A DNA stretch of 64,000 bases from Mytilus californianus. Lineage: Eukaryota. The notes under the pieces were generated by a model, which ran no database searches, was not told the DNA's origin, and worked only from the letters and a program-made list of their open reading frames with translations. Positions 6,079-60,100 of this stretch are shown here, piece after piece. The stretch is from positions 3,038,001-3,102,000 of the forward strand of contig NW_026262673.1 of assembly GCF_021869535.1 (NCBI RefSeq), in the 5' to 3' direction. The translations under genes and the position numbers were made by a program. How positions within the stretch are numbered: position 1 is the first letter of the stretch; the number at the start of each line of letters is the position of its first letter.

Positions 6079-6481
6079 TTATACAGTAATTGTTATCATC
6101 CATTTTTGATTTTTAAATTTCGTATTTTTTCTAAGACAGGCATTTATCTAATGGTAAGACAGGCATGTATCTAATGGTAAGACATTGCTTACATCAACTT
6201 CATTTGAACTTTAGTGGATAGATGTCTCATTGGCAATCATACCACATCTTCTTATTTTTATATGTATCTAATTATATGGTAAGACAGGCATGTATCTAAT
6301 GGTATAAAAAAAATTATTCAAACCAAATGCATAAACGGCGTTTATACTTAATCCTAAATTTATTTGTTTTGTTTAATCGCATTAAAGTGCAAAATAAATT
6401 GCAGACTGGACAAAAGAGATTAAACCTATAAGTTTACATTTTATAATGTTATTCTTTATTATATCTGTGTTGTTGTCTAAA

Positions 6482-7370
6482 ATGATCAGGCATTGGAAAC
6501 TCTTTCCATTTACTTTCTACTTTACGTTATTGTTTCAAATAATAAATGGAACATCTCCAACCGGTTGCAGTTATGACAGCGCCTTTTCATCAACGGGGAT
6601 TTATACTTGTGTATTTGGAAGCTACACCGAACCTTTGACTTACTCAGGATTTTCAAGTCCTCTTCCACAAAGACTGATGATAACGAATTTAAACGGAAAC
6701 TTACCAGCCAGTGGAAGTGCGTTTTCTGGATTTTCTAGCTTTACCTCTGGTTTGTTCGACAAAAATTACCCAGCTTACCTCGACCTAGTCTGTACAACGT
6801 CAGGTTCGATAACTCTTACAACAAGTACCTTCACCGATATGAGTTATCTACAAGAAGTTAAATTTTCTTATTGTAACATAGTTTCCTTATCAAATGGCAT
6901 GCTGGGACCATTCGGAAGTCTGAACTCATTGATATTTGAACACGGGTCCATAGCTTCTTATTCGGCAGACTTTTTGACATCTGTTACAATAGAACCACTT
7001 GCTGTTGCAGAACCTACGGGAGAACTTATTATAAAGGATTGTTCGATTACTCCAACTACAATACCCGCAGGTGTGTTCGACGGACAAACGTCAATACGAA
7101 CAATAAAATTAGATAAAGCTGGTGTTACAGCTATTGATGCTTCAGCCTTTAGTCTAACAACTCAGCTCAATTATATATCCCTGGTTGACAACTCTATTAC
7201 GTCATTGGAGAGTAACCTCTTCACAAGTATAAAAAGTCTGTCGTCCATTGACCTAGGTGGACTTGCATATGACTGTTCCTGTTCAAATTTAGACGTTCTA
7301 ACGTATTCTAATGAAAACTCTGTGAAACTGCCGTCTGACTTGATTTGTAACACACCAGCTAGTTACCAAG
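6482..7370 (+). CDS. LRR-TM paralog 1, exon 1 of 3 (signal peptide, LRRs, LRRCT start)
   Basis: MIRHWKLFPFTFYFTLLFQIING-TSPTGCSYD...YTC...LPQRL...LNYISLVDNSITSL...YDCSC...LICNTP. Donor CAAG/GTACGT at 7371, phase 1. An in-frame upstream ATG at 6446 is an alternative start; 6482 better matches paralog signal peptide lengths. join(6482-7370,7697-7753,8755-8987) = 392 aa. Confidence 0.9.
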
Positions 7371-7696
7371 GTACGTTATATTCCAAAAAAAAAAGGAAAT
7401 TCGTTAGTAAAATCATTCGAGTGTTAGTTTTGAATTCTTATCTTTTAAAAGCATTCGTAAAATTTTAGAAAATAAGCTTTTGAAATAGTGATGGAGCTTT
7501 AACTGACAAAAATATATTTTACTTTAAATAGACTGGTCTCATATCCAGTTATCTGTTTGGATTCTTACTGAGGTTGCCTTGCTACTCGCAATTATATATA
7601 TTATCTTTTAAAACATAAACTATTGATCAGAAAATGAGGTAAATTACATCAATATCTTAAGTTGTATATAAAAGAGAATGCTCTATATTTTTGTAG

Positions 7697-7753
7697 ATAA
7701 AAAGGCAACAAAGTTTTACGCTGAGACCTGTGCTACTGTGTCAAGTTGTTCAG
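7697..7753 (+). CDS. LRR-TM paralog 1, exon 2 (57-nt Cys micro-exon)
   Basis: TTTTTGTAG/ acceptor, /GTAAAT donor; encodes (D)KKATKFYAETCATVSSCS(G); homologous to the micro-exons of the other six paralogs. Confidence 0.88.
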
Positions 7754-7960
7754 GTAAATCTAAATTTCGTTTTCCTTCACATTCAATTGTTTTTTGTGAT
7801 CTGTGCTGATCTGAGGGATCAACTGAATTTCACAGTTTGATTTTATGCTGAACTGTTACACTACTACCCAAGGTTAGATTGAGGATTGAATGCGCACAAA
7901 ATTTTTAGACCCCGCAATCATCAGTTTGTCTTTGACTTATAAGAATATTCGTTCGGTTTA

Positions 7961-8220
7961 CTGATTCATTGATTGTTAGTGTTTAACCCCACTTTAATCA
8001 CTATTTACTATATCATATAGACCTTTGAGTTGTATTGTTGCAAGAAGCCAGAGTAACCGGAGATACTCTCTAACCTTTGGCAGGAAAACTAGCAATTCTT
8101 TTCAAGGAAGATTTGAGTCGAACGCACATGCCATGTACGGGGTTCGATCTCATATCCTAAGTGTTGACAGGCTTGTGATAAAGTAGATCAATATATAGAC
8201 CACTTGGCCACCGAGGCCCC
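7961..8220 (-). mobile_element. tRNA-derived SINE (copies 22675-22893, 52693-52943, 59075-59321, all minus strand)
   Basis: Minus strand begins GGGGCCTCGGTGGCCAAGTGGTC (A-box-like). B-box GAGTTCGAACC is clearest in the 22.8-kb copy. Central GGTGGTTTTCTCC.GGCACTCCGGCTTCCTCCACC block resembles conserved V/Meta-type SINE cores (from memory). 3' (ATCA)n tail. Confidence 0.75.
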
Positions 8221-8754
8221 CATATATTTCCCTTTGGTATCATCCGCCTCTTTTTGTCAACGTTCCCCCAAATCTCTATTTGACCTATTTGTTGTGTAAA
8301 GTCAAAGCATTATATAAAAAAAAAACATAAAAATAGACCTAGGATTTTTTCTCACTTTGTACATGTATATTCATCAACTTGAAACGCTTAATATTTTGAA
8401 ACAATGGACATAAAATTCGAGATAAAAAAGGCCCTTACCGAACTTACTCCTCTTTGTTCTACCCAAAAATCCATTTTTTCAGTGGTCGTCCAAATTGTCC
8501 GCTCTTCATACTGATGAAAAGGTTTACGTATCTGATAGATATTTTCTCTTCGTGAAAGAATGAAATGTTTGCCACTGGACGTTAAGGAAAAAGCAATGAA
8601 CAAATAAAGTAATATACAATGTATACTGGTGCGATTTAACTGTTGTGTTTAATTCTTAGTTTTAGAAAAATGTTATCTTCGATTTAATGCTTCAAATTGC
8701 AATCAATAAAATTGGGTGGCAGACTTTTATTATTTACTTTAAATTTAATTGTAG

Positions 8755-8987
8755 GTCTGTCTTGTTATACTGCAATAGAAATCGTAGGATTCGTTTTACT
8801 AGGCCTGGCACTGATCGTCGCATGTGTTGCCTTGGCAATGATATGTCATTCAAAACGACAAATTACTACTGCTGCAATAACATCAAGGAGAAGACAACCG
8901 AATAGATGGTCAAAAATGAAAACTGCTATGAGGGCTACAAATCGTGGTCGCCGAGGAGAAAAACCTCCAATGAAATCCAAATATTGA
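8755..8987 (+). CDS. LRR-TM paralog 1, exon 3 (TM helix and basic tail)
   Basis: TTGTAG/ acceptor; GLSCYTAIEIVGFVLLGLALIVACVALAMICH-SKRQ...RWSKMKTAM...KPPMKSKY*. Confidence 0.88.
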
Positions 8988-9977: not shown

Positions 9978-10854
9978 ATGAAAACAAACAACAATTTAAT
10001 GAAAGTACTACTGTTTCTTCTACTTGTCAAATATTCATCGAGTGCTCAACCCACCGGCTGTTCCTACGATGGCACATTGACATCAACCGGACTATATACT
10101 TGTGTTGTAGGAAGCTACACTGCACCTCTAGCCTATAGTTCTTTCTCCAGTCCTCTGCCACAGAGATTGAAGATCACAAGTGTTACAGGAACATTCACCT
10201 CTCAATTGTCAGGATTCTCCAGCTTCTCGACTGGTTCTTTTGACGCCAATTATCCAGCAAGCCTCGAACTGGAATGTTCTTCGTCAAATTCGTTAACGCT
10301 ATCAAGTGTATCCTTCACAGATATGGGTTATCTCCAGGAGGTGACATTCAGTTTCTGCAACATAGTATCGTTGACTTCCGGTATGCTGTCTCCTTTCGGA
10401 ACACTCAATTCTTTGCGATTTGAAGGGGGTTCCATTGCTTCATATTCAAGTGACTTTCTAACTGGACTCATAGTGGAACCCGTGACAACAACTCCAGAAC
10501 CGAAAGGAGAACTTGTCATTAAAGATTGTACGATTACCCCGACTTCCATACCAGCCGGGACATTTGACGCTTTGACAACAGTAAAGTCGATTCGTGTAGA
10601 GAACGCCGGCGTAACAGCTATTGACAGTTCACTTTACAATCTGGCAGTGGCTGTAGACGACTTATCTCTTGCGGATAACTCTATCACCACTCTAGACAGT
10701 GCTATTTTTAGCAGCCTGAAGGGTCTATCTGATATAAACCTTGACGGGATACCGTATGATTGTTCTTGTACCTCCCTAGCATTTCTACAGGCCGTGTCTC
10801 AGAACTCTATTCGATCGGCAGGTCCCATCTGTAATTCACCAGCTGCCTATCAAA
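9978..10854 (+). CDS. LRR-TM paralog 2, exon 1 of 3
   Basis: Signal peptide, then QPTGCSYD...YTC...PLPQRL...LSLADNSITTL...YDCSC...ICNSP; donor A/GTAAGT at 10855, phase 1. Closest to paralog 1. join(9978-10854,11652-11708,12810-13060) = 394 aa. Confidence 0.92.
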
Positions 10855-11651
10855 GTAAGTAACATTGCATAAACATCTTTTTTTAAATTCTAAGGGGTTT
10901 TTTTTAAGTCAAAATGATACTATAATTAATAACAGTACAAGTATTTGTACAAAAGCTAAAATTGGAAAAGATCAAAATGTTTGCAAAAAATATACAATGT
11001 TGTTTTATTAAAGTTCTTCTGATTAAACATTAATTTAATATTTGATTATATATACAAATTTACAAGATAAAGTTAAAAAAGATGGTCACGACACGAAATC
11101 CAGTTTTAAAAATCCATAAAATGTATTTTTGAATTATCTGACATCAACAACCATCAACACTCATCTAAACAATAAACTGATAACCTGGCGTGCTACCATG
11201 CATAGCATGAGGTTGGTTAAACCAGTTTAACTTGCGCAATAAAGATAAATTATGATGTTTTATTCTCTAAGGAATCTTATAGAATCAAATTATGCTCCAT
11301 CCTAGAAAACCAATGTATAAAGGGGGATATAAGGTATACGCCAATGCGACAGAAATCCAACAACAACTTAAACCAAACGACTTCTAGAGGTCAAAGTAAT
11401 GGTCTTAAACAATAGACATGTGTGTTAACAAGATATCGTCCCGATCTGAAAAATATTTAAAACAGTAACCGAACAGTGATTCTGGACGTTTTAAAGTTTT
11501 TTGTTCGTCACTGTTTCCATTGTAACTGATAGTGTGATGCCTTTTTTGAGATGGTCTATTTGATGTGAGATTGTTTACTCTTTCTTCATTCAGTTGTCTT
11601 CAAATTAAGACCTTGGATGCATCTAAAGTGTAATTGTAATTGTTATTTCAG

Positions 11652-11708
11652 ACAAGAAAGCGACAAAATACTATACAGATTCTTGTGCTACTAGTGTGAG
11701 CTGTGCAG
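11652..11708 (+). CDS. LRR-TM paralog 2, exon 2 (57 nt)
   Basis: TATTTCAG/ ... /GTTAGT; (N)KKATKYYTDSCATSVSCA(G). Confidence 0.9.
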
Positions 11709-11877
11709 GTTAGTATATACACAGTAACATGAGTCGATATGAGCTGTACAGGTTAGTATATAAGCAGTAACATGAGTCGATATGACCAAAACAGGTTAGT
11801 ATATAAGCAGTAACATGAGTCGATATGAGTTGTACAGGTTAGTAGGTTAGTATATAAACAGTAATATATTCGATATG
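11698..11877 (+). repeat. 43-bp tandem repeat x4 spanning the exon 2 donor of paralog 2
   Basis: GAGCTGT(G/A)CAG/GTTAGTATATA...GTAACATGAGTCGATAT units start at 11698, 11741, 11784 and 11827. Confidence 0.85.
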
Positions 11878-12809
11878 TTCAAAGTCTTTGAATTTATAAA
11901 GCCCCATGTTTTTAAAATAAATATACTGATAAATTGTTTCAGTAAACCAATGTTGTTTTTTTTTAATTTATACGGTTTCTTCGGATAAACTATTTAAAAG
12001 ATGAAACTGTTCTGTTAAGTAAACAAAATAATAATCTATATATATATATATATATATATATAAACATGTTTTAACTTTTTTGATGATAATTTTATGAATT
12101 TTATTGTGAAACTATATTGATATGTACATATAGCATGTGTTAAGTGTCTCATAAGTCAAATTTTGACTGGGTAGTGGTTGTATTATTGAATACTGTGATA
12201 TGTAAATATTTTGTCAATCAATATGTGACATTATATTAAAACGAATATTTATTTATTTATATAAGATAATGAGAGAGAAAGTACTTTGTGTAGACTAAAA
12301 TGCAAATCATGTGTCCAAGCTAAGGTAGCAAGGATCTGACAACACTCGATTTTACTTTCTGTTCTGGTAATGATTATAACAGCCAATGAAGTTTCAGTCT
12401 TCAAATTGTTGAAGGTGTGTATGAATCTGGTAAGACCAGAGAATCCCGAAAGGTCTTAAAAAAACTGAAAATATAACGGATTATTTTCAGATCCTTGTAA
12501 GAATAGCTTAGACACAAGACCTGTGTTTTAATCATATTGTTATTTCTTGCTATTTTAACAAATATTGCCTTCTTATAGCTACATTATATGCATTGAGTGC
12601 ACATGACGACTATTTCCTTCTGATGGCTACTTTATATGCATGAGGCAACTGCAAAATATCGATTCAAATATAATTTTATATACATTTAATGCCTATATAT
12701 ATATATATAGCTGTTGGACCTAATTATATGATTTTTTAGAAACTTAAATGCAGTCAGATTGTTCAGAATAATATATATAGTATAATATAAGTGTAACTTC
12801 TCTGTTTAG

Positions 12810-13060
12810 ATATAGCCATTGGATCAACCTGTATGACTGTGTATGAGCTTGTTGGTAGTGTTCTGAGCTTTGTTACCTTAGTGATAGCGGCAATAGCACT
12901 GGTTATCATTTGCCACACCCGACGTCAGCTCATGACAGCAACCTCTAACTTGGAAAAGAACAGAAACAGTGGATGGTCTAAAGCCAAGGACGTTATGGGT
13001 ACAAATAGATCAGTCAAACCTCCAATGAAAGGATCGCAAGCTGTACATGGTTGGGCATGA
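12810..13060 (+). CDS. LRR-TM paralog 2, exon 3 (TM and tail)
   Basis: CTGTTTAG/ acceptor; DIAIGSTCMTVYELVGSVLSFVTLVIAAIALVIICH-TRRQ...GWSKAKDVM...KPPMKG...GWA*. Confidence 0.9.
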
Positions 13061-18692: not shown

Positions 18693-19569
18693 ATGGGTCT
18701 TCATTTTCATGTTCTTTTTGTAATATCTGTTTTGTCATCATCATCCGGGGACCCTACCGGTTGTACCTATGATGCATCGACAATCTTATTCACCTGCAAC
18801 GCAAGAAGTTGGAGTTTGCCTCTTGTTTTTTCTGACTTTACCACAGCTCAGCCGCAAAGACTGATGCTGAAAGATGTTGATGGTGAAATCTCATCAAGTG
18901 CACCAAATGGACCTGCATTTTCGGGATTCAGTAGTATTAACACTGCTACTTTTGACCCAGACTATGCGCCAGCCCTGTATATCATGTGTTATTTCGGAGG
19001 GCAGTTGATTTTGGACAAAGAAGCGTTTGCCGATTTCAGTTACATTGAAGAAGTCAAAATCCTAAACTGTGATATTCTATCCATTCCTGTTGAAGCATTC
19101 TCTTACTTTGGAGATGTCAACTTGTTCCACATTGAAGGCGGATCCATTTCTAATATGGTGGCTGATAGTTTCAAAGATCTGAACGTAAATCGAATGACAA
19201 CAGTACCGAATCCTAAAGGAGAGTTCGCAATTATTAATTCAGAGCTGACTTCCGGCGCATTGGCGTTCGGAGCTTTGTTTAATATGCCAAATATAGAACG
19301 AGTGATGATTGAAAACGCGCACCTATCAACAGTAACATCCGACATGTTCTATGCTTTATCAAAGTTGAATTATGCTTCCCTGAACTATAACACATTTACA
19401 ACCATCCCGAACAACATGTTTGCCAATGTCTTTGGCCTCGCCACAGTTGATATGTATGGCATCAGCTGGGACTGTTCCTGCGACAACCTCTGGTTCTTGG
19501 ACTATCTAACAGAGAACAATATCACTATGAACGGTGACATTGTCTGTAGCACTCCCGTTGATTACGAAA
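18693..19569 (+). CDS. LRR-TM paralog 3, exon 1 of 3
   Basis: MGLHFHVLFVISVLSSSSG-DPTGCTYD...FTCNARSWSLPL...APNGPAFSGF...IMC...LNYASLNYNTFTTIP...WDCSC...DIVCSTP; donor A/GTAAGT at 19570. join(18693-19569,21136-21201,21729-22030) = 414 aa. Confidence 0.93.
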
Positions 19570-20859
19570 GTAAGTGATATTGTTTGTAGCACTCCTGTTG
19601 ATTACGAAAGTAAGTGATATTGTCTGTAGCACTCCTGTTGATTACGAAAGTAAGTGACATTAAATTGTCTGTAGCACTCCTGTTGATTACGAAAGTGAGT
19701 TACATTGTCTCTAGCACTCCTGTTGATTACGGAAGTAAGTTACATTGTCTGTAGCACTCCTGTTGATTACGAAAGTAAGTTACATTGTCTGTAGCACTCC
19801 TGTTGATTACGAAAGAAAGTTACATTGTCTGTAGCACTCCTGTTGATTACGAAAGAAAGTTACATTGTCGGTAGCACTCTTGCTGATTACGGAAGTAAGT
19901 GACATTATCTGTAGCACTCCTGTTGATTACGAAAGTAAGCGATATTATCTGTAGCACTCCTGTTGATTATGAAAGTAAATGATATTGTCTGTAGCATTCC
20001 TGTTAATAACCAACGCAAGTAACATTGTTTGTAGCACTCCTTTTGATTACGAAAGTAAGTAACATTGTCTGTAGCATTCCTATTGGTTACGAAAGTAAGT
20101 GACATTGTCTGTAGCACTCCTGTTGATTAGAAGGTTAGTGATATTTTGTGCAGCACTCATGTTGATAACAAACGTAAATAAACTTGTCTGTAGAACTCCT
20201 GTTCATTACGAAGGTAAGTAATATTGTCTATAGCACTCATAATAATTACGAAAGTAAGTGACATTGTTTGTAGCACTCTTGTTGATTACCAACGTAAGTT
20301 CCATTGTCTGATACGCTCTTGTTGATTGCGGAAGTAAGTTACATTGTCTGTAGCACTCCTGTTGATTTACAAAAGTAAGTGATATTGTCTGTAGCACTAC
20401 TTTTGATTATGAAAGTAGGTGACATTGTCTGTAGCACTCCCGTTGATTACGAAGGTAACTGATATTTTCTGTAGTACTCCTGTTGATTACCAACGTAAAT
20501 AACCTTGTCTGTAGCACTCCTGTTGATTACGAAAGTAAATGACATTGTCTGTAGCACTCTTTTTAATAACAAAAGTAAGTTACATTGTCTGTAGTACTCC
20601 TGTTGATTACAAAAGTAAGTTAAATTGTCTGTAGCACTCCTGTTGATTACAAAAATAAGTTACATTGTCTGTAGCACTCCTGTTGATTACAAAAGTAAGT
20701 GACATTGTCTGTAGCACTCCTGTTGATTACAAAAGTAAGTGACATTGTCTGTAGCACTCCTGTTTTTTAAGTAAATAAGTAACATTGTCCGTAGCACTCC
20801 TGTTGTTTACCAACGTAAGTAATTGTCTGTAGCAATCCCTTAGTTGATTACGAAAGTAA
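19536..20859 (+). repeat. 40-bp minisatellite (~33 copies) made of the last 34 nt of exon 1 plus the GTAAGT donor of paralog 3
   Basis: Unit GACATTGTCTGTAGCACTCCTGTTGATTACGAAA/GTAAGT; the first copy is the real exon end and the rest fill the first 1.3 kb of intron 1. Confidence 0.95.
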
Positions 20860-21135
20860 TTTGTCAAAGTTATACTCATTCTGGTACTTTATTGTATTGT
20901 ACAGCTTATTGTGTATTATTCCATACATTTGCTTTTCAGTACAATTTATAGCAAAAATTAACCTATATTCATTAAGGAAATGATTTACCTATAATTTGAA
21001 ATGTTAATAAAGGTACAAATTATCAATCAGGTACTAAATTAAGGTCAAAACGAGGACCTTTTTCCACAGTAATGCAATATTGTTTATACATTGCTAATGT
21101 TGATATAATATTTAATTGCGACTTTTCTCTTTCAG

Positions 21136-21201
21136 ATAAACGTGCAACAAAGTACAACTTGGACACGTGTGTGACAGATGGGGTCTGTGGTAGTATAACA
21201 G
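21136..21201 (+). CDS. LRR-TM paralog 3, exon 2 (66 nt)
   Basis: TCTCTTTCAG/ ... /GTAAAG; (N)KRATKYNLDTCVTDGVCGSIT(G). Confidence 0.9.
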
Positions 21202-21466
21202 GTAAAGCGCTGTAAAATTTAGGGTTCTGTGAATTTTAATAAAAGCAGATTCAAGGTATACACCAATGAGACAGAAACCCAACAACACAATGACATAACA
21301 AGGTCAAGTGTCTATATTCTAAAATTTTGCTTACAAGACTAAAAGCAAGTTAAGAATTATTTCATTGACAATTAAACTAGAAAAAGATAACAGGATGAAA
21401 AATATCAGGCTTTTTAAGCAGCCAAACAGAGGTACATTGAAAATGATAAACATGTTAAATGTATAA

Positions 21467-21638
21467 CAGACGCGAATCCAGGATTTGGTTTTGATGGGGG
21501 TGGGGGGCTCCTAAGAATAAGAAGTTAGAGAACTATATTTTGACAAAAAATATGGCTGAAATTTTACCTTTAAGTTACATTTGTTGTCTTGTTTTAGGGG
21601 GAAGGCACCAGGTGTGCTCCGGTCTGAGTCCGCGCCTG
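21467..21638. mobile_element. MITE with imperfect 15-bp terminal inverted repeats
   Basis: CAGACGCGAATCCAG...CTGAGTCCGCGCCTG; TATAA on both flanks (21462-21466, 21639-21643); lies in intron 2 of paralog 3. Confidence 0.65.
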
Positions 21639-21728
21639 TATAATTATATTAAACAACGTTGCACTAAGTCGGTACTTGTAATACATTATTTTCTGCAAAC
21701 TATTAGAAATATTTTTCTTTAATGATAG

Positions 21729-22030
21729 GTATTGGTATTGGTAGTACGTGTGTGAGTATGTTCGAGCTGATCAACTACATTCTCTTGTTAATCACGCTCG
21801 TCATATCCTGTGCAGCTCTTGGTCTTATTATCCACACGAAGCGGCAAGTCAGTGATACCATAGAACCAAACAAGCCTGAACAATCGCCTAGCAGGAACAT
21901 GAGCCAAAACAGAATTTCTGGTAATCAACGAGAGCCGCCGTCTTTAGAAGAATTACAGGCTGGTCCGTTGCCTAAGAAACAATCTGGAGCTACTATTAGT
22001 AACATGGATGCCATAGATACGGAAGCTTAA
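21729..22030 (+). CDS. LRR-TM paralog 3, exon 3 (TM and tail)
   Basis: GATAG/ acceptor after a T-rich tract; GIGIGSTCVSMFELINYILLLITLVISCAALGLIIH-TKRQ...DAIDTEA*; AATAAA at 22169. Confidence 0.88.
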
Positions 22031-42280: not shown

Positions 42281-42459
42281 CAAGAGAATATAATTCATAA
42301 AAATACACAAGTTACCGAAGCAATCGTGGCAATATCCCACACTTGTGGGCTTGGTTAGTAAAAGACTCTAGATTCTTATTAATGATAACACTTATATTCA
42401 AACATATAATGTGTCCCTCTTTTGAACATAAGTATTCAGATTTGTTTTGTATATTTTAG

Positions 42460-42525
42460 ATAGAAGAGTGGGGTCATATTATACAGCCTATTGTTTGAGT
42501 TATGATGTATGTCAAGGAGAAACAG
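42460..42525 (+). CDS. LRR-TM paralog 5, exon 2 (66 nt)
   Basis: ATATTTTAG/ ... /GTTTGT; (N)RRVGSYYTAYCLSYDVCQGET(G); same cysteine spacing as paralogs 3, 4 and 7. Confidence 0.87.
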
Positions 42526-43582: not shown

Positions 43583-44202
43583 GTTTTGCCTCGTCTGACA
43601 CGTGTGTAAAGGCAGTTGACATGGTAACGTACATACTGACTGTACCTATCATAACTTTCACTGTTATAAGTTTAGTATTTCTCATACAGTTGTTACTGTA
43701 TATAAAGAGAAATGAACAACATATACGTGAAATGATAGAAGTTCCAAACATCGATACACGAGAAGATAAGTTTGCTAAAGCATTAGCGGCGAAAATTGCA
43801 AAAAATGAAGAAACTACGGAAAACAAGAGCTATTCCCATAACTGGTTAGGTGCAAAACGGAAGCTTATGATAGCAAGAGCCTTATCGAAACAGATTACGG
43901 CTAACCAATCAAATAATCCTTTACCAGAGGATACAAAGCAATGGACCAACCAATCAAACAATCCGTTACCCGAGGATACAAAACAATGGAATGAAACATC
44001 TCAAGAAATATATAGTGACAATGAATCAGATCTAGAAGATTATGATGAAGATTATGAACTACAGGATCTATCAGCTTTACGAGGAGAAAGACTTACACAA
44101 GCTCTGGAAGAAAAGATATTAAGAGATTTAGAGAATATTCCTGTTGTTTCGGGTATATGGGTTGCTGCTCCAAGGGGAAGTAAACCTGGACTAGAGTTTT
44201 AA
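43583..44202 (+). CDS. LRR-TM paralog 5, exon 3 (TM and long tail)
   Basis: CCTTTTCAG/ acceptor; GFASSDTCVKAVDMVTYILTVPIITFTVISLVFLIQLLLY-IKRNE...(NQSNNPLPEDTKQW)x2...DLEDYDEDYEL...KPGLEF*; AATAAA at 44312. Confidence 0.88.
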
Positions 44203-47453: not shown

Positions 47454-48321
47454 ATGAATGTTGGATGCATTTTGATACTGTTATATCTACCTGGTGTTTT
47501 ATCAAATCCCGTCGGCTGTTCCTATGATGCAAGTAATGTACTTTACACGTGTAATGCTAGATACTGGTCTCTGCCTCTTGTGTACAGTGCCTTCACCGTA
47601 CAACCACAACGAATTGTATTGGAAGACGTTGCAGGGGAACTACCAGCCACTGCACCAAATGGACCAACTTTTAGTGGGTTTAGTTCAACAAGTGCTGCAC
47701 TATTTGACGGAAGATTCTCTCCGTCTTTGCAGATAATGTGTTTTGTAAATAGCGATTTGATCATTTTCATGGACACGTTTGACGACTTTGATTGGATAGA
47801 CGAGGTGATCATTACAGACTGTAACATATTGTCTCTGCCTGTCCAAGTGTTTGCTCATTTTGGTGTTGTTAACTCTTTTACAATTGAAGGAGGCTCTATA
47901 ACTAACATGGTGGCAAACAGCTTTCAAGGATTAAATGTTAAGAAAATCACAAGTGCGCCTACGCTGAAGGGATCATTTACAATACGAAACAGCCAAATTA
48001 CTTCTGGACAGCTAGCACCTGGTGCTCTGTTTAACATTAACAATGCCACAACCATTATCCTCGAAAATAACCACATTACAACAATTGGTAAGGATACATT
48101 TCAGGGCGTGCCACAATTATATAACCTTACGCTTAGTTATAACGACATTACAAGCATTCCTGAATCTATATTCGAAAACCTCCATGCTTTGGAACACGTG
48201 ACCATTTGGGGAGTACAATGGGATTGCAAGTGTAGTAATCTCTGGTTTCTGACTTACGCCTCTAACAACAATATAACTTTTAACGGAGATATTGTATGTT
48301 CTACACCAGCAGGATATACTA
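47454..48321 (+). CDS. LRR-TM paralog 6, exon 1 of 3
   Basis: MNVGCILILLYLPGVLS-NPVGCSYD...YTCNARYWSLPL...APNGPTFSGF...LYNLTLSYNDITSIP...WDCKC...DIVCSTP; donor A/GTAAGT at 48322. join(47454-48321,49145-49204,50278-50756) = 468 aa. Confidence 0.93.
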
Positions 48322-48468
48322 GTAAGTTCGTAGTTAACAGTTTGTCAGCTAATCTGCAAAAGATTACTTAACAAACATTCAGTTGCATTCGTATTGCTTC
48401 AAACTTACAATATGTGCATTCTATACAATCATATTTTTTGTGTATTCAGGGATTCTTTACGAACATTT

Positions 48469-48773
48469 AAGGAATGACTGTAATATTTTTTCTGTCTATG
48501 AAGAAATAACATCAAAAATGTCGTGCACACTGAATAATCCGCGTAGCGGGTTATTTTAAAGTGTGCACCACATTTTTTATGTTATTTCGAATAGACAGAA
48601 AAAATATTACAGTCATTTCTTATAATTTAATTCTAAATTCCATTTTAAACCGGAGTAAACCATGAAAAAACGTTGATGACGTCACGGTCACATGACAAAA
48701 TTATGTCTATGAGCTGATAAACAAAACAACGTCAGCCAATCAGAAGACGCGTTATATCCAAAATTAAATTATA
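48469..48773 (+). mobile_element. Palindromic MITE-like element (inverted copy 52253-52557; internally deleted copy ~5063-5190)
   Basis: ~150-bp hairpin 48469-48621 (AAGGAATGACTGTAATATTTTTTCTGTCTAT...CCGC-GTA-GCGG...ATAGACAGAAAAAATATTACAGTCATTTCTT) plus a tail carrying TGACGTCACGGTCACATG and CAGCCAATCAGAAGAC. Confidence 0.8.
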
Positions 48774-49144
48774 GTTGTGGGGTTTATGTCAATGAGACAA
48801 CAACCCAACGTCAGCTCAGAGAAGCGTTCCCCTAAAACAGTATTTTACATCTTTTACATCTTCTATGATTGGGCATTAAATGAAAATTATAATAATTATT
48901 ACAAATTAAAATGTACGTACTTTGTTTTTTTTTTAATTACCAATTTTGTAAGCTATAAAAGGTCATGACATAACAAAATGTATAACAAATTCAAACGAGA
49001 AAACAAAAGGCCTGATTTATGGAAAAACAAATATGGTAAACAGCCTCCAACGACCTCCATTGGATTACAGGCTACTGACTTGTGACAGGCACTTATATCA
49101 TTTGACTGTATTAACGTTTGTTATATGTTGTTAAATAATTCCAG

Positions 49145-49204
49145 ATACAAGAGCCTCGTCATTTTATCAGAATAACTGTGTATTTCCATGTGATGGGAAA
49201 ATAG
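49145..49204 (+). CDS. LRR-TM paralog 6, exon 2 (60 nt)
   Basis: AATTCCAG/ ... /GTAAGA; (N)TRASSFYQNNCVFPCDGKI(G); C-x3-C instead of C-x5-C. Confidence 0.87.
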   Translation: MQEPRHFIRITVYFHVMGK

Positions 49205-50277
49205 GTAAGAACATTAATTATAAAAAAAACTAGAAGGAGTAATATAACGAAGTGAAGTTTCTTTAAACCTTTTTGAAGCTACGTACGATTTGAACATGTT
49301 AATCAATAAATATCAGCTGTTGATCTTTTGGATATTATGTAGGCTTCTTTCACGTGTACCTATGCTTTCGAGCGCATTACATTTGCGCGCAGCTTTTTAT
49401 TGCACTTGCACGCATTCGTGTTACAGGTAATACATATAGATATAAAGATAATTCATTATAAATATGCCGACTGTCATTATTTTGAACATATTTATAATTT
49501 CAAACTATATACTTGTATATTGGTTTAAAACAAATATATTAAGTGATTAGGAAAAACCCCGTTACCGCTTAAGGAATATACAATTATATGTAACTTAATT
49601 CCGAATATTGGATAGCGAATAGTATTTTGTTTCCTAATTTTACTGAATAATTCAACAGCCGCACAGGGGGGCAAATACTAACGGAAGGGGCACTTGTAAA
49701 TAGATAAATAAATAGATTTGAATAATTTATTTGTGTTTAAGTAAATTTACCTGTGTTAACCTCTAAAATGGATGCGCGCAAACGTAATCAAAAGCTGCGC
49801 AAACGTGATGATTTTTACGTGCAAATGTATTTGCATGTTATCTATAATACCGGTATATTAGATATCTTATTAACTTTATAAGATGTTCATTAAGTATGTA
49901 TGAACAATCTAACAATAACAAGAACAGTAACGCATTAAAAAAATACATATGTACATTAGAATATACATAAGAATAAAAACATGTACTAAATTACGCCTCC
50001 CCTACCAACCGGCACACAGTCACAGAAAAAAACTTATTCAAAGTATCGAGAAAAGTATCAAAAGAAGGAAAACAAAAAGTAAAAATTAACTTGACATAGA
50101 ATAAAGGAAAATAAATCAAACCGGCAACGCTCTTCAATGAAGAATGACTAACACGATATGATGTTTTAAAACAAATAGAATAATTCTTCATCAATTGAAC
50201 AATAGTCGATAAACAAATGTAAATGTGTATTTTCAAATTTGTCATTTCATATGTCTTTTTAATAAAACTAATTCCAG

Positions 50278-50756
50278 GTTTCCACATCGGGGAAATATGT
50301 ATTACAGCTCTCGATGTAGTTAACTTCGCAACTGCGTTCTTAATTTTGATCCTGACAATATTTGGTTTCGGAATTATCATATATCTTCACTGTAAAGAGA
50401 AAAATGAAGAGGAAAGAATCGAAAAAGTCAGAGGCATCCGAAATGTTATGGCTGACAAACTTGCAGGTATCCTTCGAAATAAGATAAATAAAATCGAAGA
50501 GTTTGTTCAGGATAATATAGATGTCTATCGCGAAAAAACCAAGGCAAGTGAGGAAACTAAAGAAAACCAACACAAAACGGACACTCCAAAAACGCCAAGA
50601 AATTTAAATGAAATAGACGAAAATGAATACTCGAGAGACGACAATGATCTAGACGAAAGTGAATACTCGAAAGACGACGATGATCTAGACGAAAGTGAAT
50701 ACCAAAGCAGCGAAACAGATTTAGAAACCCGTGAAGAAAGTGATAGTTGTCACTGA
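50278..50756 (+). CDS. LRR-TM paralog 6, exon 3 (TM and acidic tail)
   Basis: AATTCCAG/ acceptor; GFHIGEICITALDVVNFATAFLILILTIFGFGIIIYLH-CKEK...(DE.EY...D..DL)x3...SDSCH*; AATAAA at 50797. Confidence 0.88.
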
Positions 50757-54513: not shown

Positions 54514-55381
54514 ATGGTTCTCCGATGCATTTTGATTTTGATATTTGTACCTTTCACACTGTCTAATCCGACCGGATGTACGTACAGTACAGACAACCTG
54601 TTATATTCCTGCGACAGCCGATTATGGGTGTTACCTTTAGATTATTCACAGTTTACGGTGCAGCCACAGAGACTTCTGATCAAAGACATGTCCGGAGAGC
54701 TTGCAGCGTCGGCTCCAAATGGACCCGTGTTTAGTGGCTTTAGTGCGATCAATACTGCATTATTTGATGTTAGATTCCCGCCATCTTTACATATTATGTG
54801 TGTCGCTAATGGCTTTCTCATGATGGTAAAAGATGCATTTCAAGATTTTGGATGGGTTGAAGAACTGATTATACAGGATTGTGACATTATTTCGCTTCCC
54901 GCGCAAGTATTCGCACATTTTGGTGAGCTTAATTCGTTAATCATTGAGGGTGGATCAATGGACGCTATGGTCGCAGACACTTTCTATGGATTAAATGTTA
55001 ACAAAATGGCGTCTGCTGTCACACCCAAAGGGGAATTTATACTTCGGAACACTGAAATTATTGGCGGTTCTTTGCCATACGGTGGTCTCTTCACTCAGAG
55101 CAATGCATCAACAATTATACTGGATAATATTCACCTGAGCTCCCTTCGCACTGATACATTTTATAACAACCTGAAACTTACTAATTTATCTATAAGTTAC
55201 AATGACTTAACTAGTATCCCAGACAATTTGTTTCTCCAGTCAAGTTCTTTACAATACGTTCGGATATACGGAATCCCTTGGGCATGTGCATGCAGCTCTC
55301 TCGGGTTTATCCCTTATGTCATCAACAATAACATCACTTTGGAAGGAGATATAGTTTGTACTTCGCCTGCGAATTATGCAA
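54514..55381 (+). CDS. LRR-TM paralog 7, exon 1 of 3
   Basis: MVLRCILILIFVPFTLS-NPTGCTYS...YSCDSRLWVLPL...APNGPVFSGF...LTNLSISYNDLTSIP...WACAC...DIVCTSP; donor A/GTAAGT at 55382. join(54514-55381,55873-55938,56922-57157) = 389 aa. Confidence 0.93.
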
Positions 55382-55872
55382 GTAAGTTATAATTAACATT
55401 TTCTTATCTTTATACACTGCTTTATCAACATAGCTTTAAATTTGTATTCCAAAAAGGCTATGTACAGTTTGTCTTTTTTTAAAAGAACTTGATTTGTTCT
55501 TGAAGTTTCACTGTAATTTTAAGACCTGTTTAATAGAATCAAAATATGATATTAGTACATAAAGTGACTAGACATGGCATTGTTACCCAAGTAGGTTTCT
55601 GTCACAATATAATGCCCGGATTTTGTGGAACATGTATATCACGGAAATATGCACTGTATCTCTCTAAAAGTACACGTTTAAAAACACTGACTTTAGGTAG
55701 GACTTCAAGAAAGAGAAGGACCATTGTACGTTTAAAAGTAAATAATGATAAGGAATGTTCATACGTGCAGTGGTTTAATAAAAGAGTAGATCTTGTCAGT
55801 TTAAAATATTACATGTATACTTTTATCTCTTGAGGATGTTTACATTAACGGCCATTTGATTTCGTTTTACAG

Positions 55873-55938
55873 ATCAGAGAGGAGCTGTTTATTATGCCAC
55901 GAACTGTATAAGTTATGATGTTTGTGCAGGTCAAACAG
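55873..55938 (+). CDS. LRR-TM paralog 7, exon 2 (66 nt)
   Basis: CGTTTTACAG/ ... /GTCAGT; (N)QRGAVYYATNCISYDVCAGQT(G). Confidence 0.9.
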
Positions 55939-56599
55939 GTCAGTATTCCAGAATTTTCTTTTATAAATAAATCAGCGTTAATCCCATAGTGATAGTAATG
56001 GGGTATAAACAAAAAATGAAATATTTTGTTCATACTAAGAAAAGTGGTATTGTTTCGTTCGTTCCTTCTTTTATTGTTTATATTTCAAACAGAACGACTT
56101 TTCTGTCCTTGTTTATATTTCCTTCCTGTCCTTTATATAGTGTGTCCATTTCACAATTGTGTTAAACGTGTCAGATGTCAGTTATTATGATATTTTTCGT
56201 ATAGACATTTGTGTTTGTGCTCGACATATCGTACATGCATCTTTGTGTTCATGTTTCGTGCTGTGCTATTATGTAATATGTAATTTAATATTCAGGATGA
56301 GAACAAAGTGAAATTAAAATGAATTTGTAGATCGTTGGCCTATGTATAGGACGTGAGGCTTGGAATGCCTTTTTAAAACAATGGTATATTGGATTAAATC
56401 AGATTGTTTTTCATTCTAACCGACCACTACGAAGACTATTGAAAAAGTCCTTTAGCGTGCAGAGATTTATAGTTGACATTCAATTGAAAGTTTAAACCAT
56501 CATGACCATTCGGAAAATGCTTTCACTTTTTCTATTTACATGTGTATTGTTCGATATAAATTTGCCACATAGCTACACGACAAAAGAGACCACACATCG

Positions 56600-56735
56600 A
56601 TTCTCCGCTAGACCTTAAACAACCACCCATCAATTTTTCGCTAGACCTTAAACAACCACCAATCAATTTTCCGCTAGACCTTAAATAACCACCAATCAAT
56701 TTTCCGCTAGACCTTAAACATGTTAAACAACCTCC
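56600..56735. repeat. Short ~33-bp minisatellite (3-4 copies) in intron 2 of paralog 7
   Basis: TTTTCCGCTAGACCTTAAACAACCACCAATCAA repeated. Confidence 0.8.
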
Positions 56736-56921
56736 AATCAATATCAATCAAACAATAAATCACGTGATAAAGTCTCTGTAATGCAAAGGTCGTGATTTAA
56801 ACACATTTTTAATCTGGAGTGACATTTAAATAAGAACTATTTGTACTAACTTGTATGTATACTTGTTGATTATGGAAGATTTATGTTAACTTGTATTTAA
56901 CATATGTTTTTTGTTTTCCAG

Positions 56922-57157
56922 GTTTTGCGAGTGGTGGAAAGTGTATAACTGTTTTAGATATCATAAGCTATGTATTCTTCGTTCTCAATACTATCATTGC
57001 TTGTATAGCCTTTGGTCTCGTGTTGCATCTTTTCCTCCGCCTTAAAGAAATTAAAGACAAAAGAAGAGGTTTTATGTTACGAAGAATGTTTGGTGTTGAG
57101 CAGGCCAAAACTAAAACGTTCAATGTAGTCAAACCACGGGACCCTTCATTTGACTAA
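56922..57157 (+). CDS. LRR-TM paralog 7, exon 3 (TM and tail, apparently truncated by a premature TAA)
   Basis: TTGTTTTCCAG/ acceptor; GFASGGKCITVLDIISYVFFVLNTIIACIAFGLVLH-LFLRLKE...KPRDPSFD*. The frame stays open from 57158 to a second TAA at 57371-57373. Confidence 0.85.
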
Positions 57158-60100
57158 TACCAGCAGGCAAAGACTAAAACGTTCAATGTAGTCAAACCAC
57201 GGGACCCTTCTTTTGACGAATACCAGGCGACCAAGACCTTGCCATTTAATAATGTCAATCCGAACACAGAAAGTGATCATAGTAGCTCCGCAAATTTAAT
57301 GGATTTCAATACAGAGTATATTCATTTGTATTCTGTTTTATACTATATTAATTTACCTAATGATGATAAATAAATAATGGACTTAACCGGAGTTATGTTT
57401 GACCTTTTTAGACTAAACGATTGAGTAAAGCAGGTAATGAACAAGTTTTCCTGTTTTTTGTTTTGTTCTTTTGCTCTTGTAAAAGCTGTCGTGATCTTTT
57501 GTAAAATGATATTTTATAATTTGATGCGACTGTCATACAAGTGAGAGGTTTAGCTAGCTATAAAACCAGGTTTAATCCACCATTTTCTATATAAGAAAAT
57601 GCCTGTACCAAGTCAGGAATATGACAGTTGTTATCCATTCGTTTGATGCGTTTCGTTTTTTTTTTATTTTGCCATTTGATATGGGACTTTCCTTTTTGAA
57701 TTTTCCTCGTAGTTCAGTATTTTTGTGATTTTACTTTTTATGATGTTTGTTTTACTTAATATAAACATAGATCATTCTTTTAGCAAAATATCTAACAAAT
57801 ATTCGGTTAATGTGATTTTTTATTTTCAAGAACAAAATTATTTCAATTTCCTGTTTGTTTTATTGAAAATGCATAAGGAGAATTAGGAGACATCATGTAA
57901 AGTTGCATTCGTGGACGGTGCATGTTGTATCATTGTCGTTAATGGTTACATATATCTCATAAAATCTTATTTCTCTAACATGACTGCTTCAATTTCAGTT
58001 TTTGAAAATAACATATTCTATCTATGGATCATTTGTCTTCAGTAGAAGTATTGTAATATTTAATCGCCATCGGTGATTAAAAAAGGAAATAAATAGACGT
58101 TCTGTTCAAATCTAAAATAAATAATACAAATATGGGACTCAGTTCTATCATTGATCATTTTATTTTAGACATAATTTGGTAAACCGAGACAGTTAACGAC
58201 CTGTTGCATTTCAGTAATGAAGAATACAAAGAAAAACACAAAAGAAAATTCGTGCCATATGACAACAACTCTGCATGATCGTATCCACCGTGTTTCAACA
58301 CAATAATAAGTGGGTAGGAACAGTATGGGATGAATTGGAGCTTTAACAATAAGAGTATAGACACTATTGTTGAGACTGTGTGTTGCTCTATTACTTCAGA
58401 GCTCGTATTCCCCGTCGTGGCTACACATTTTGGTCCTTTTCGTTTCTATCAGCTATCCAATGTTTGTAATAGATTTGGCCTCGGGCATGATTTCTGGCCA
58501 CCGTTAAACAGGCATGATTACTTATCGAAATGCGCATCTGTGGCAGTAGAATTGGAACCGTTACCGTTACTAGTTAATTTTGTTGTTGGGTTGCTGTCTC
58601 ATTGACGTACACCTACATCCCCTTTTGCTTGTGTCAAGAACAGTGAAGTTAAAGTGTAAGGGTTTGACAAGATTAAAGAATGAGACCATGTCACCAATTA
58701 TGACAAATCAAATGATTCAACAAATTATTTTTCAGGAAATAATTTGTGACCTATCCGGAGATTCTGAGTTCAATCCGTGTGTTGATGGTATTACTTTAGT
58801 GTTAAGTGTAGCGTTTTATACTGTTGTTTGTCTATTCATATAAAAATAAGATGTAGTATGATTACTTGGGACAGTTGGGTTATACTAGTTTGCTGGCGAC
58901 AAACCCTGCCCTAACCTAGGACAGTGGTGTAACAGTACAGCATATAAACAAACTATAAAAATCAGTTGAAAAGAGCCAAACTCATTAGATCGATAAAAAG
59001 CAGAAAAAAACAGCTTACAAAAAAAAAAAAACGGACCGGACGTGACAGGGTATTTATACATCCACACAACAAAATTGATTAATTGATTGATTGTTGGAGT
59101 TTAAACGCCACTTTTAAGCGCCACATTTGGGCTATTTCGTGGCGGCCAGTTTTTATTGGTGGAGGAAGCCGGAGTGCCAGGAGAAAACCACCGACCTTCG
59201 ATAGGAAAACTGAAAATCCTAGTCAATTAAGATTGGAGTCGAGTGCACCAGCACGAGCAGTGTTGACTGGCTAGTGATTACAGTAGTAGAACTACTTAGA
59301 CCACTTGGCCACCGAGGCCCCCTCCACACAACAAAAAAGACACTAAATATAAAAATAAGAAGATGTGGTATGATTGCCAATGAGATAACTCTCCACAAGA
59401 GACTATATACGACACAGAAATTAACAACTATCGGTCACAGTACGGCCTTCAACAATGAGCAAAGCCCATACCGCATAGTCAGCTATAAAGTCTGTACTAA
59501 GTACAGATCTGAGAGTACTCGTAGTTACTGACAGCTAGTTCAAAGCCAATAACAACTAATACAACAAAAGTGCACGTGCTGAAATGGCATAGATTGCGTT
59601 CATTGAAATCCAAAACGTCACTTCAAACACGGTCATAGCGAACGACTTGGGATATATAAACACGGTCATAGCGAATGACTTGGGATATATAAACACCGTA
59701 AGGTGGTACCAAAGGCACATCACCATCCAAAAAAGGAAAATAACAATAGGGAACGAAAAGTCGTCCCCTTTATCGTACATTTTGGTGTAAAACTGAAATA
59801 TGTAAATCTAGGAAAGGACAGCTATTACCGTTTATATTTGATTTGTTTAAAATAAGTTCCTTTGGGTAAATTTCCTTCTGGGTGAAACAAAACAAAAAAG
59901 AAACATTTCTTTGATTCAGACATCTGTTGATTAATAACACAAAACAGCAAAAAAAATCTAATTAATTTGAAAACATAATTATATAGTCTACAAGTCAAAA
60001 CAATGATAAAATAAATATACATTTCACAATTGTTCAGCTTATCTACTAAAATATACATAGAAAATGACAACATTCATTCCATTTGACAAATTCTCCATAG

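What the first reader, a model, noticed from the sequence alone, without database searches (positions are those of the whole stretch)
6446..57373. Seven-gene tandem family of TIR-less LRR receptors with a shared ectodomain and unrelated cytoplasmic tails
Seen: seven co-oriented genes with the same three-exon, phase-1/phase-1 structure, all splicing in frame. The ectodomain has a PxGC..YxC cap and about 7-8 irregular LRR-like units, and only the penultimate one carries the canonical LxLxxNxL Asn. Other units have Cys, Gly or Ala there, and one has a loop insertion (e.g. MTTVPNPK). This is followed by LRRCT, an extra juxtamembrane cysteine pair and one TM. Two subfamilies are visible: paralogs 1-2 versus 3-7, the latter mostly with an APNGP insert. 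Cytoplasmic tails range from ~45 to ~165 aa and are basic, Arg/Ser-rich or acidic. Known: bivalves expand LRR and TLR pattern-recognition genes, and TLRs signal through a TIR domain that is absent here. Inference: a lineage-specific diversified receptor family (immune recognition, adhesion or allorecognition) in which related sensors are coupled to different intracellular outputs. I do not recognise it as a named family.
Basis: partly seen in the sequence, partly recalled or inferred. Interest (0 to 1): 0.85.

Follow-up and report, generated by a model that had tools for sequence, protein, structure and literature searches.

The report
Seven tandem TIR-less LRR membrane-protein genes
This is a real cluster of seven intact mussel genes for small cell-surface leucine-rich-repeat proteins from an unnamed but old mollusc-and-annelid family; the mussel copies carry different, individually conserved inner tails, but they evolve conservatively and their function is untested, so it is a well-built yet fairly ordinary gene-family expansion.

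Summary
Window 6446-57157 (+ strand) carries exactly seven co-oriented genes and no extra fragments. Each has three exons, GT-AG introns and phase 1/1 splicing. Each encodes a signal peptide, a two-Cys N-cap, eight LRR rungs (the first six irregular), an LRRCT, a Cys-containing stalk, one TM helix and a 40-168 aa tail. No TIR is present anywhere in the window. The genome is Mytilus californianus. A spliced transcript contig from a congener matches both g2 junctions exactly.

The interpretation needs three corrections.
- The family is not bivalve-specific. It occurs in heterodont and pteriomorph bivalves, gastropods and the annelid Owenia. Scallops and oysters have the same co-oriented tandem arrangement and exon structure. 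Mytilus expanded subfamily A to 2 genes and subfamily B to 5.
- The tails are not all unrelated. g1~g2 and g5~g6 are homologous pairs. g2 keeps an ancestral tail ending in GWA that is conserved as far as annelids.
- The two ortholog pairs tested are under purifying selection (dN/dS 0.07 and 0.30, tails included), which argues against arms-race or allorecognition receptors.

g7's stop at 57155-57157 is shared by four other Mytilus species, so the CDS ends there, not at 57373.

Best reading: an uncharacterised spiralian eLRR-TM family of adhesion or co-receptor type. The genes are already in RefSeq under inconsistent automatic names.

The parts
6446..8987 (+). g1 (subfamily A), 404 aa; exons 6446-7370, 7697-7753, 8755-8987. 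The start may instead be the Met at 6482.
   Evidence: Model. It is 98.7% identical to M. californianus XP_052097361.1, which is annotated as only 302 aa. The basic tail is homologous to g2's.
9978..13060 (+). g2 (subfamily A), 394 aa; exons 9978-10854, 11652-11708, 12810-13060. It keeps the ancestral tail that ends in GWA.
   Evidence: Model. A 1287-nt contig in run X1 joins 10854|11652 and 11706|12808 (the cut fits 2 nt further, equal to 11708|12810) and ends about 13 nt after the stop. Residues 116-394 are 100% identical to XP_052097379.1. The M. coruscus ortholog is also 394 aa.
18693..22030 (+). g3 (subfamily B), 414 aa; exons 18693-19569, 21136-21201, 21729-22030
   Evidence: Model. It is the closest mussel copy to the oyster genes P0011 and P0012 (50% identity).
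26885..33666 (+). g4 (subfamily B), 436 aa; exons 26885-27746, 28941-29006, 33284-33666. It lacks the APNGP insert. The tail keeps SGSTWNK and then runs into an Arg/Ser-rich extension.
40239..44202 (+). g5 (subfamily B), 518 aa; exons 40239-41109, 42460-42525, 43583-44202. The 168-aa tail is helical plus acidic.
   Evidence: Model. Orthologs of 511-517 aa exist in M. edulis, M. trossulus and M. galloprovincialis, with tails 86-89% identical. AF2 predicts no folded tail domain (pLDDT 48).
47454..50756 (+). g6 (subfamily B), 468 aa; exons 47454-48321, 49145-49204, 50278-50756. The 122-aa acidic tail is homologous to g5's.
   Evidence: Model. It is 95% identical to, and the same length as, M. coruscus P0001. 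dN/dS is 0.30. Tail alignment is A4.
54514..57157 (+). g7 (subfamily B), 389 aa; exons 54514-55381, 55873-55938, 56922-57157. The basic tail is 40 aa.
   Evidence: Model. Residues 59-389 are 100% identical to M. californianus XP_052097429.1. Orthologs of 389 aa exist in M. trossulus, M. edulis and M. galloprovincialis. dN/dS is 0.07; the tail shows 0 aa changes at dS 0.41.
19534..20859 (+). 40-bp x 33 minisatellite in g3 intron 1 that copies the end of exon 1 together with its GTAAGT donor
   Evidence: An in-frame stop follows the first donor, so only the first donor can yield the conserved product.
11697..11844 (+). 43-bp x 3.4 repeat that copies the end of g2 exon 2 together with its donor
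   Evidence: The transcript contig uses the first copy.
57099..57226 (+). 63-bp x 2 duplication spanning the g7 stop codon at 57155-57157
   Evidence: The stop position is shared by orthologs in four other Mytilus species.

Best explanation
What is shown. The seven genes are functional members of an uncharacterised spiralian (mollusc plus annelid) family of small type-I extracellular-LRR membrane glycoproteins. An ancestral co-oriented tandem pair (subfamily A, subfamily B), still seen in scallops and oysters, was amplified in the mussel lineage to 2 + 5 genes. For g2, g5, g6 and g7 this happened before the Mytilus species split. Each product has a capped eight-rung LRR arc, an LRRCT and a short Cys-containing stalk. 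The TM helix has a conserved acidic or polar residue at its outer edge and a (C)H-T-K/R-R-Q basic edge inside. The tail is short and mostly disordered.

What is inferred about mechanism. The LRR arc binds an extracellular partner. Output goes through short linear motifs in the tail and/or through lateral contacts of the conserved stalk and TM segment with another membrane protein. This is how vertebrate small eLRR-TM proteins work (LRRTM, NGL and FLRT adhesion molecules; TRIL- and LRRC26-type accessory subunits). There is no catalytic or adaptor domain of the protein's own.

The tails. The ancestral tail has the SSWNKV box, then KPP.K, then a C-terminal G-W-A/V/I. It survives in g2, partly in g1 and g4, and was replaced in g3, g5/g6 and g7. 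So the paralogs probably couple diverged but individually conserved ectodomains to different cytoplasmic partners. Purifying selection points to stable, probably endogenous, ligands.
For: Gene integrity and structure.

Transcript evidence: a spliced contig matches both g2 junctions and ends just after the stop.

Species and orthologs.

Family range: bivalves of both major clades, Haliotis, Babylonia and Owenia.

Tree: B clade 100/100, Mytilus g3-g7 monophyletic 96/92, g1+g2 100/100.

Synteny and exon structure: conserved in Pecten and Saccostrea. The g6-to-g7 order is conserved in M. trossulus.

Selection: dN/dS 0.07 and 0.30, with the tails constrained. Paralog-specific tails are 80-100% identical between species.

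Tail and TM motifs: conserved from annelid to g2.

Fold: LRR arc with caps. Nearest matches are Nogo receptor, NGL, Slit D2, FLRT and LRRTM in PDB, and TRIL, chondroadherin-like, LRRC15, LRRTM4 and LRRC26 in the Atlas.

No other domain: none in the tails, and no TIR anywhere in the window, with a positive control of 7e-22.
Against: - No ligand, partner, tissue or induction data exist for any member, so the mechanism rests on analogy with vertebrate eLRR-TM proteins.
- Only g2 has direct junction evidence, and that comes from a congener. The same-species RNA run showed no reads on g1 or g2 in the 6% of it that was sampled.
- dN/dS comes from two pairwise comparisons, which cannot exclude a few positively selected sites.
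- G-W-A/V/I is not a canonical PDZ class I, II or III ligand, so its partner is unknown.
- The flanking genes are immune or apoptosis types (TRIM/NHL-like upstream according to earlier notes, CARD-caspase downstream). That would fit an immune role equally well.
Confidence: 0.6

Rival explanations
1. They are innate-immune pattern-recognition proteins or TLR accessory or decoy molecules (like TRIL, RP105/CD180 or CD14, or membrane-bound counterparts of the scallop 'LRR-only' PRRs). They would bind microbial ligands and act with the expanded bivalve TLR set.
For: - The C-terminal rungs plus LRRCT align with TLR3, TLR13 and Toll ectodomains as well as with other eLRR proteins.
- The best structural cluster in the Atlas is TRIL.
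- Scallop LRR-only proteins are reported to bind LPS, PGN, glucan and poly I:C (PMC5877582).
- The cluster lies between TRIM/NHL-like genes and a CARD-caspase gene.
- Tandem expansion is typical of bivalve immune genes.
Against: - Purifying selection on the ectodomain (0.08 and 0.21).
- Conservation of the family, its tandem arrangement and its tail motifs across phyla.
- The LRR similarity to TLRs is generic and no better than the similarity to LGI1, LRRC15 or LRRTM.
- No expression or binding data.
- No sequence link to the CfLRRop proteins could be tested.
Confidence: 0.2
2. They are auxiliary subunits of ion channels or other multipass membrane proteins, analogous to the LRRC26/52/55/38 gamma subunits of BK channels or to AMIGO and LINGO. 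They would act mainly through the conserved stalk, TM helix and post-TM basic stretch.
For: - Same size and layout as LRRC26: about 300-400 aa, a capped short LRR arc, one TM and a basic stretch after the TM. The LRRC26 cluster is among the structural neighbours, with TM-score 0.64 normalised by the target.
- The stalk and TM segment and its polar boundary residues are conserved across the family, which is unusual for a passive anchor.
- g2's stalk plus TM is 100% identical to M. coruscus, against 96% for the ectodomain.
Against: - No sequence-specific similarity of the TM or tail region to any solved chain.
- The N-cap has two Cys rather than the four of LRRC26-type LRRNT.
- In g5 and g6 the stalk plus TM is less conserved than the ectodomain.
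- Nothing links the family to a channel.
Confidence: 0.12
3. They are hypervariable allorecognition or self/non-self receptors, diversified among individuals.
For: Tandem paralogs with diverged ectodomains (32-59% identity). Mussels show strong presence/absence variation in general; this rests on my own knowledge and was not tested here.
Against: - Orthologs are 95-96% identical between species, with dN/dS 0.07-0.30.
- A DNA run of the same species covers g1 and g2 at even depth (about 35-50x). Over g2 exon 1 it shows about 0.8% differences (10 of 1225 nt), which is ordinary for mussels.
- The cluster is syntenic in M. trossulus.
Confidence: 0.03
4. Some or all copies are decaying duplicates or annotation artefacts.
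For: Repeats have grown on exon ends in g2, g3 and g7. RefSeq models for g1, g2 and g7 in this species are truncated. No same-species RNA reads were seen on g1 or g2.
Against: - All seven ORFs are intact with canonical splice sites.
- Lengths are conserved in congeners.
- Purifying selection extends up to the g7 stop.
- A spliced g2 transcript exists.
Confidence: 0.03

Closest known systems
Vertebrate small eLRR-TM adhesion or organiser proteins (LRRTM1-4, NGL/LRRC4 family, FLRT, LRRC15)
   Same: Type-I topology, a capped LRR arc with LRRCT, one TM and a short tail that works through linear motifs. These are the best sequence and structure matches.
   Different: - No Ig domain (NGL) and no FN3 domain (FLRT).
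- Only 8 rungs, six of them irregular.
- A two-Cys N-cap and an extra Cys-containing stalk.
- The tail motifs (SSWNKV, C-terminal GW[AVI]) are unlike ECEV or ETQI.
- No orthology: only the last two rungs plus LRRCT align significantly.
BK-channel gamma subunits (LRRC26/52/55/38)
   Same: About the same size: a short capped LRR ectodomain, a single TM and basic residues after the TM. LRRC26 is a structural neighbour.
   Different: No specific sequence similarity in the TM or tail, and a different N-cap cysteine pattern. LRRC26-type proteins are, to my knowledge, vertebrate-specific.
Toll-like receptors and TIR-less TLR partners (TRIL, RP105/CD180)
   Same: The LRR plus LRRCT plus TM layout. TLR3, TLR13 and Toll are among the HMM hits and TRIL is the top Atlas cluster.
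   Different: No TIR domain in any tail, ORF or frame of the window. The ectodomain is far shorter than a TLR's. The similarity is generic LRR.
Scallop LRR-only proteins (CfLRRop-1 to -6)
   Same: Bivalve proteins whose only recognisable domains are LRRs. They are reported as PAMP-binding PRRs (PMC5877582).
   Different: The proteins in this window are membrane-anchored, with conserved tails.
Nogo receptor (RTN4R) / Slit D2 LRR domains
   Same: Best Foldseek matches over the whole arc.
   Different: NgR is GPI-anchored and Slit is a secreted multidomain protein. RMSD is 8-10 Å over the full length, which indicates different curvature.

Membership tests
Extracellular LRR (eLRR) type-I membrane proteins (generic class) | Signal peptide, N-cap, LRR arc, LRRCT and a single TM | tested here: met
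Toll-like receptor | Cytoplasmic TIR domain | tested here: not met
   Pfam scans of the ectodomain exons, the g4-g6 tail exons and other ORFs find no TIR. A tblastn of two TIR domains against all six frames of the window gives nothing below E 0.1, while the control scores 7e-22. The g2 transcript ends just after the stop.
NGL / LRRC4 family (the automatic name 'LRRC4C-like') | Ig C2 domain between LRRCT and TM; C-terminal ETQI PDZ ligand | tested here: not met
   Only about 35-45 residues lie between LRRCT and TM, there is no Ig hit or fold, and the tails end differently.
FLRT (the automatic name 'FLRT1-like') | FN3 domain after the LRRCT | tested here: not met
Nogo receptor family (the automatic name 'RTN4RL2') | GPI anchor with no cytoplasmic tail | tested here: not met
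   A hydrophobic 21-residue TM is followed by a 40-168 aa tail.
LRRC26-type BK gamma subunits | Four-Cys LRRNT, six LRRs, LRRCT, TM and a polybasic stretch; orthology to the vertebrate genes | tested here: inconclusive
   The layout is similar and LRRC26 is a structural neighbour. But the N-cap has two Cys and the TM/tail region has no sequence match.
Spiralian LRR-TM family defined here (unnamed) | PxGC..C cap; Cys at the Asn position of rungs 2 and 3; single canonical Asn rung; LRRCT; K[RK]A..YY..C..C stalk exon; three exons with phase 1/1 | tested here: met
   All seven genes meet these features. The same exon structure is found in oyster and scallop.
Scallop CfLRRop LRR-only PRRs | Sequence identity with the published CfLRRop clones; PAMP binding | not testable with these tools
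   Known only from the review text. No sequences were at hand.

The most novel reading that the evidence does not exclude
A spiralian-specific LRR-TM receptor family has an ancestral cytoplasmic code: the SSWNKV box plus a C-terminal G-W-A/V/I that docks an unknown scaffold. It has been conserved since the mollusc-annelid ancestor. In mussels it has been repeatedly re-wired by replacing the tail within a single exon. The result is a natural series of related ectodomains coupled to at least four different, individually conserved cytoplasmic outputs. Possibly these act as TIR-less partners of the expanded bivalve TLR repertoire.
Probability: 0.2. Interest if true: 0.55.

Novelty: new member of a known kind. 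Interest (0 to 1): 0.35.

Why it matters
It defines an unnamed, phylum-spanning family of cell-surface LRR proteins that databases currently label with about ten contradictory vertebrate names.

It fixes correct full-length models for seven M. californianus genes. Three RefSeq models for these genes are truncated.

It gives a clean example of tandem duplication followed by replacement of the cytoplasmic tail while the ectodomain scaffold is kept.

It also warns against reading every expanded bivalve LRR cluster as a fast-evolving immune receptor, because these genes are under purifying selection. Beyond that, it is an ordinary eLRR-TM expansion with no demonstrated function.

Tried and rejected
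- Profile search in the word-indexed protein database. It was swamped by generic LRR candidates (8000 scored) and added no new taxa.
- Atlas search by features. Only generic arthropod LRR clusters came back.
- PDB sequence searches of the stalk/TM/tail and of the N-terminal irregular half. These gave no match and only weak generic LRR hits, so no hidden domain or named relative was found.
- tblastx and blastn among the exon-3 regions, to test whether the different tails are frameshifted versions of one another. Only the TM-coding parts match, and in the same frame, so there is no evidence for frameshift origin.
- AF2 of the g5 TM plus tail. pLDDT was 48: helical segments but no folded domain.
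- Same-species RNA run X7 laid on g1 and g2. About 6% of the run was read and no exon reads appeared. This is uninformative about silence.
- Pfam on unrelated ORFs of the window: nothing.
- Findings-index search by words: nothing.
- Literature searches. No paper on this family turned up, only on TLRs and the scallop LRR-only proteins.

Full report
1. OBSERVATION

ORFs and models. The window has seven + strand ORFs of 290-340 aa, beginning at 6446, 9978, 18693, 26885, 40239, 47454 and 54514. They align along their whole length with 39 invariant columns. Each ORF ends at a conserved A|GTAAGT donor (G|GTACGT in g1). A 57-66 nt middle exon follows, encoding K[RK]A..YY..C..C. The third exon opens with one more Cys, then the TM helix and the tail.

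All 14 introns are GT-AG and phase 1. The spliced products are 404, 394, 414, 436, 518, 468 and 389 aa. A tblastn of the models against the window returns exactly 21 exon hits, all on the + strand. There are therefore seven genes and no stray fragments. The window has no N.

Domains and fold. Pfam finds only LRR_8 and LRR_5, on the last rungs. I built an AF2 model of the g7 ortholog from a 45-sequence family alignment (pLDDT 89, pTM 0.76). It shows a cap hairpin, eight concave-face strands with irregular spacing, the LRRCT, a short stalk and a continuous TM helix. The strand starts lie near residues 53, 91, 117, 141, 174, 200, 224 and 248.
- the two-Cys PxGC..C cap;
- Cys, Gly, Ala or Ile in place of the ladder Asn, except in rung 7;
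- a loop insertion between rungs 4 and 5;
- the APNGP insert;
- one TM, and tails of 40-168 aa with contrasting composition.

2. IDENTITY AND SUPPORT

Species. g7 residues 59-389 and g2 residues 116-394 are 100% identical to Mytilus californianus RefSeq proteins on one 6.5-Mb contig. g1 is 98.7% identical to a third protein from the same contig. The window is therefore M. californianus. Those three RefSeq models are truncated (331, 279 and 302 aa).

Orthologs. Full-length orthologs of the same length as my models exist for four genes:
- g2: M. coruscus, 394 aa;
- g5: 511-517 aa in three species;
- g6: M. coruscus, 468 aa;
- g7: 389 aa in M. trossulus, M. edulis and M. galloprovincialis.

Transcript. 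I laid reads on 7250-13249. Run X1 (a congener, about 95% identical) holds a 1287-nt contig at depth 91. It covers 9900-10854, 11652-11706 and 12808-13073, which is g2 spliced exactly as modelled. It ends 13 nt past the stop. The same-species RNA run showed no reads there in the 6% sampled. That says little.

3. NO TIR

- The ectodomain exons, the g4-g6 exon-3 regions and the unrelated ORFs have no TIR or other signalling domain.
- Two TIR domains searched by tblastn against all frames of the window give nothing better than E 0.17. They find each other at 7e-22.
- The g5 tail is predicted as helices plus disorder.

4. FAMILY RANGE AND HISTORY

Range. An exhaustive phmmer search with the oyster member gave about 50 full-length cluster representatives. 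The rest were giant generic LRR proteins. Named members come from Mytilus, oysters, scallops, Mactra, Dreissena, Mya, Haliotis, Babylonia and the annelid Owenia fusiformis, the last on a 62-Mb scaffold. Their automatic names contradict each other.

Tree. The maximum-likelihood tree gives these clades:
- subfamily B at 100/100, containing scallop genes, then oyster genes, then a monophyletic Mytilus g3-g7 group (96/92);
- g1+g2 at 100/100, grouping less firmly with scallop and oyster subfamily A genes (84/81).

Synteny. In Pecten maximus a 402-aa A gene sits directly upstream of, and co-oriented with, the 389-aa B gene. In Saccostrea three co-oriented members lie within 9 kb. Both species have the same three-exon phase-1 layout. 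In M. trossulus the g6 exon 3 lies upstream of the g7 ortholog, as it does here.

So the cluster is an old tandem pair that the mussel lineage expanded to 2 + 5.

5. SELECTION

I built codon alignments with the orthologous loci.

| Region | g7 vs M. trossulus | g6 vs M. coruscus |
|---|---|---|
| Whole CDS | 0.07 (dS 0.29) | 0.30 (dS 0.07) |
| Mature ectodomain (exon 1) | 0.08 | 0.21 |
| Tail | 0 of 39 aa changed at dS 0.41 | 0.35 |

Paralog-specific tails are conserved between species about as well as the ectodomains: g2 100%, g7 100%, g5 86-89%, g6 80%.

A DNA run of the species covers g1 and g2 at even depth with about 0.8% differences in g2 exon 1.

These data argue against an arms-race or allorecognition role. 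They also show that g7's stop at 57155-57157, inside a 63-bp duplication, is old and sits at the end of a constrained tail. The gene ends at 57157, not 57373.

6. TAILS

Shuffle-controlled local alignments show g1~g2 (z 11.9), g5~g6 (z 4.3, supported by alignment A4) and weakly g3~g4 (z 3.9). All other pairs are at background. There is no frameshift relationship between tails.

Across the family an ancestral tail is visible. It starts with (C)H-T-K/R-R-Q at the membrane and continues with an SSW[NS]K[VA] box, then KPP.K. It ends in G-W-A/V/I (AWG in Owenia).
- g2 keeps all of it.
- g1 lost the terminus.
- g4 and the oyster and scallop B genes keep the SxWNK box.
- g3, g5/g6 and g7 carry new tails.

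The segment just outside the membrane (C.T..D/E/Q...Y) is also conserved. A conserved C-terminus and TM boundary suggest specific cytoplasmic and lateral partners. This step is inference.

7. COMPARISON WITH KNOWN PROTEINS

- Sequence similarity to solved structures is limited to the last two or three rungs plus the LRRCT. The hits are LGI1, LRRC15, LRRTM2, TLR3/13, VLRs, NGLs and NgR.
- The N-terminal half and the stalk/TM/tail have no specific relatives.
- Foldseek and Atlas neighbours are NgR, NGL, Slit D2, FLRT, LRRTM, TRIL, chondroadherin-like, LRRC15 and LRRC26.
- The proteins fail the defining features of TLR (TIR), NGL (Ig), FLRT (FN3) and NgR (GPI).
- They work most like small eLRR-TM adhesion or co-receptor proteins but belong to none of the named families.
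- Scallop 'LRR-only' PRRs (PMC5877582) are the nearest bivalve literature. Their relationship to this family could not be tested.

8. VERDICT

The genes form a real, intact, conserved, TIR-less eLRR-TM cluster of an unnamed spiralian family. The genes are already present in RefSeq, and function is unknown. I put the identity at about 0.95 and the adhesion/co-receptor mechanism at about 0.4-0.5. The immune-accessory and channel-auxiliary readings remain open. Interest is moderate to low (0.35).

Noticed in passing
window 19534-20859: A 40-bp unit repeated 33 times copies the last codons of g3 exon 1 together with the GTAAGT donor. The period is not a multiple of 3 and a stop follows the first donor, so all downstream copies are decoy donors.
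   Followed up: partly
window 11697-11844: A 43-bp unit repeated 3.4 times copies the end of g2 exon 2 and its donor. The congener transcript contig uses the first copy.
   Followed up: partly
window 57099-57226: A 63-bp tandem duplication spans the g7 stop. The open frame continues to 57370, but the stop is shared by four other Mytilus species and the 40-aa tail is invariant against M. trossulus.
   Followed up: yes
window 33943-35383 and 35765-38573: Two large satellites (60 bp x 24 and 25 bp x 112) lie between g4 and g5, with strong AT and GC skew at 36-38 kb. They produce many spurious long ORFs on both strands.
   Followed up: no
window 41851-42282; 45293-45915; 15634-16483; 32462-32964: Further tandem arrays in g5 intron 1 (27 bp x 16), between g5 and g6 (57 bp x 10), between g2 and g3 (192 bp x 4.4) and in g4 intron 2.
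   Followed up: no
window 9450-9850: A very high-copy repeat lies between g1 and g2: summed contig depth is about 90,000 in DNA run X5, against about 40 in the flanks. It is also present in the RNA-type runs.
   Followed up: no
window 59834-61286 (compare L003:18039-20289): The downstream flank is syntenic with the region of a minus-strand CARD plus caspase (Peptidase_C14) gene next to the g7 ortholog in M. trossulus.
   Followed up: partly
g1, g2, g7: The RefSeq models of M. californianus for these genes are truncated (302, 279 and 331 aa) compared with the 404, 394 and 389 aa supported by paralogs, congeners and, for g2, a transcript.
   Followed up: yes
L001:19213-19818 (-): The Pecten maximus locus carries a third family member on the opposite strand, downstream of the A-B pair.
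   Followed up: no
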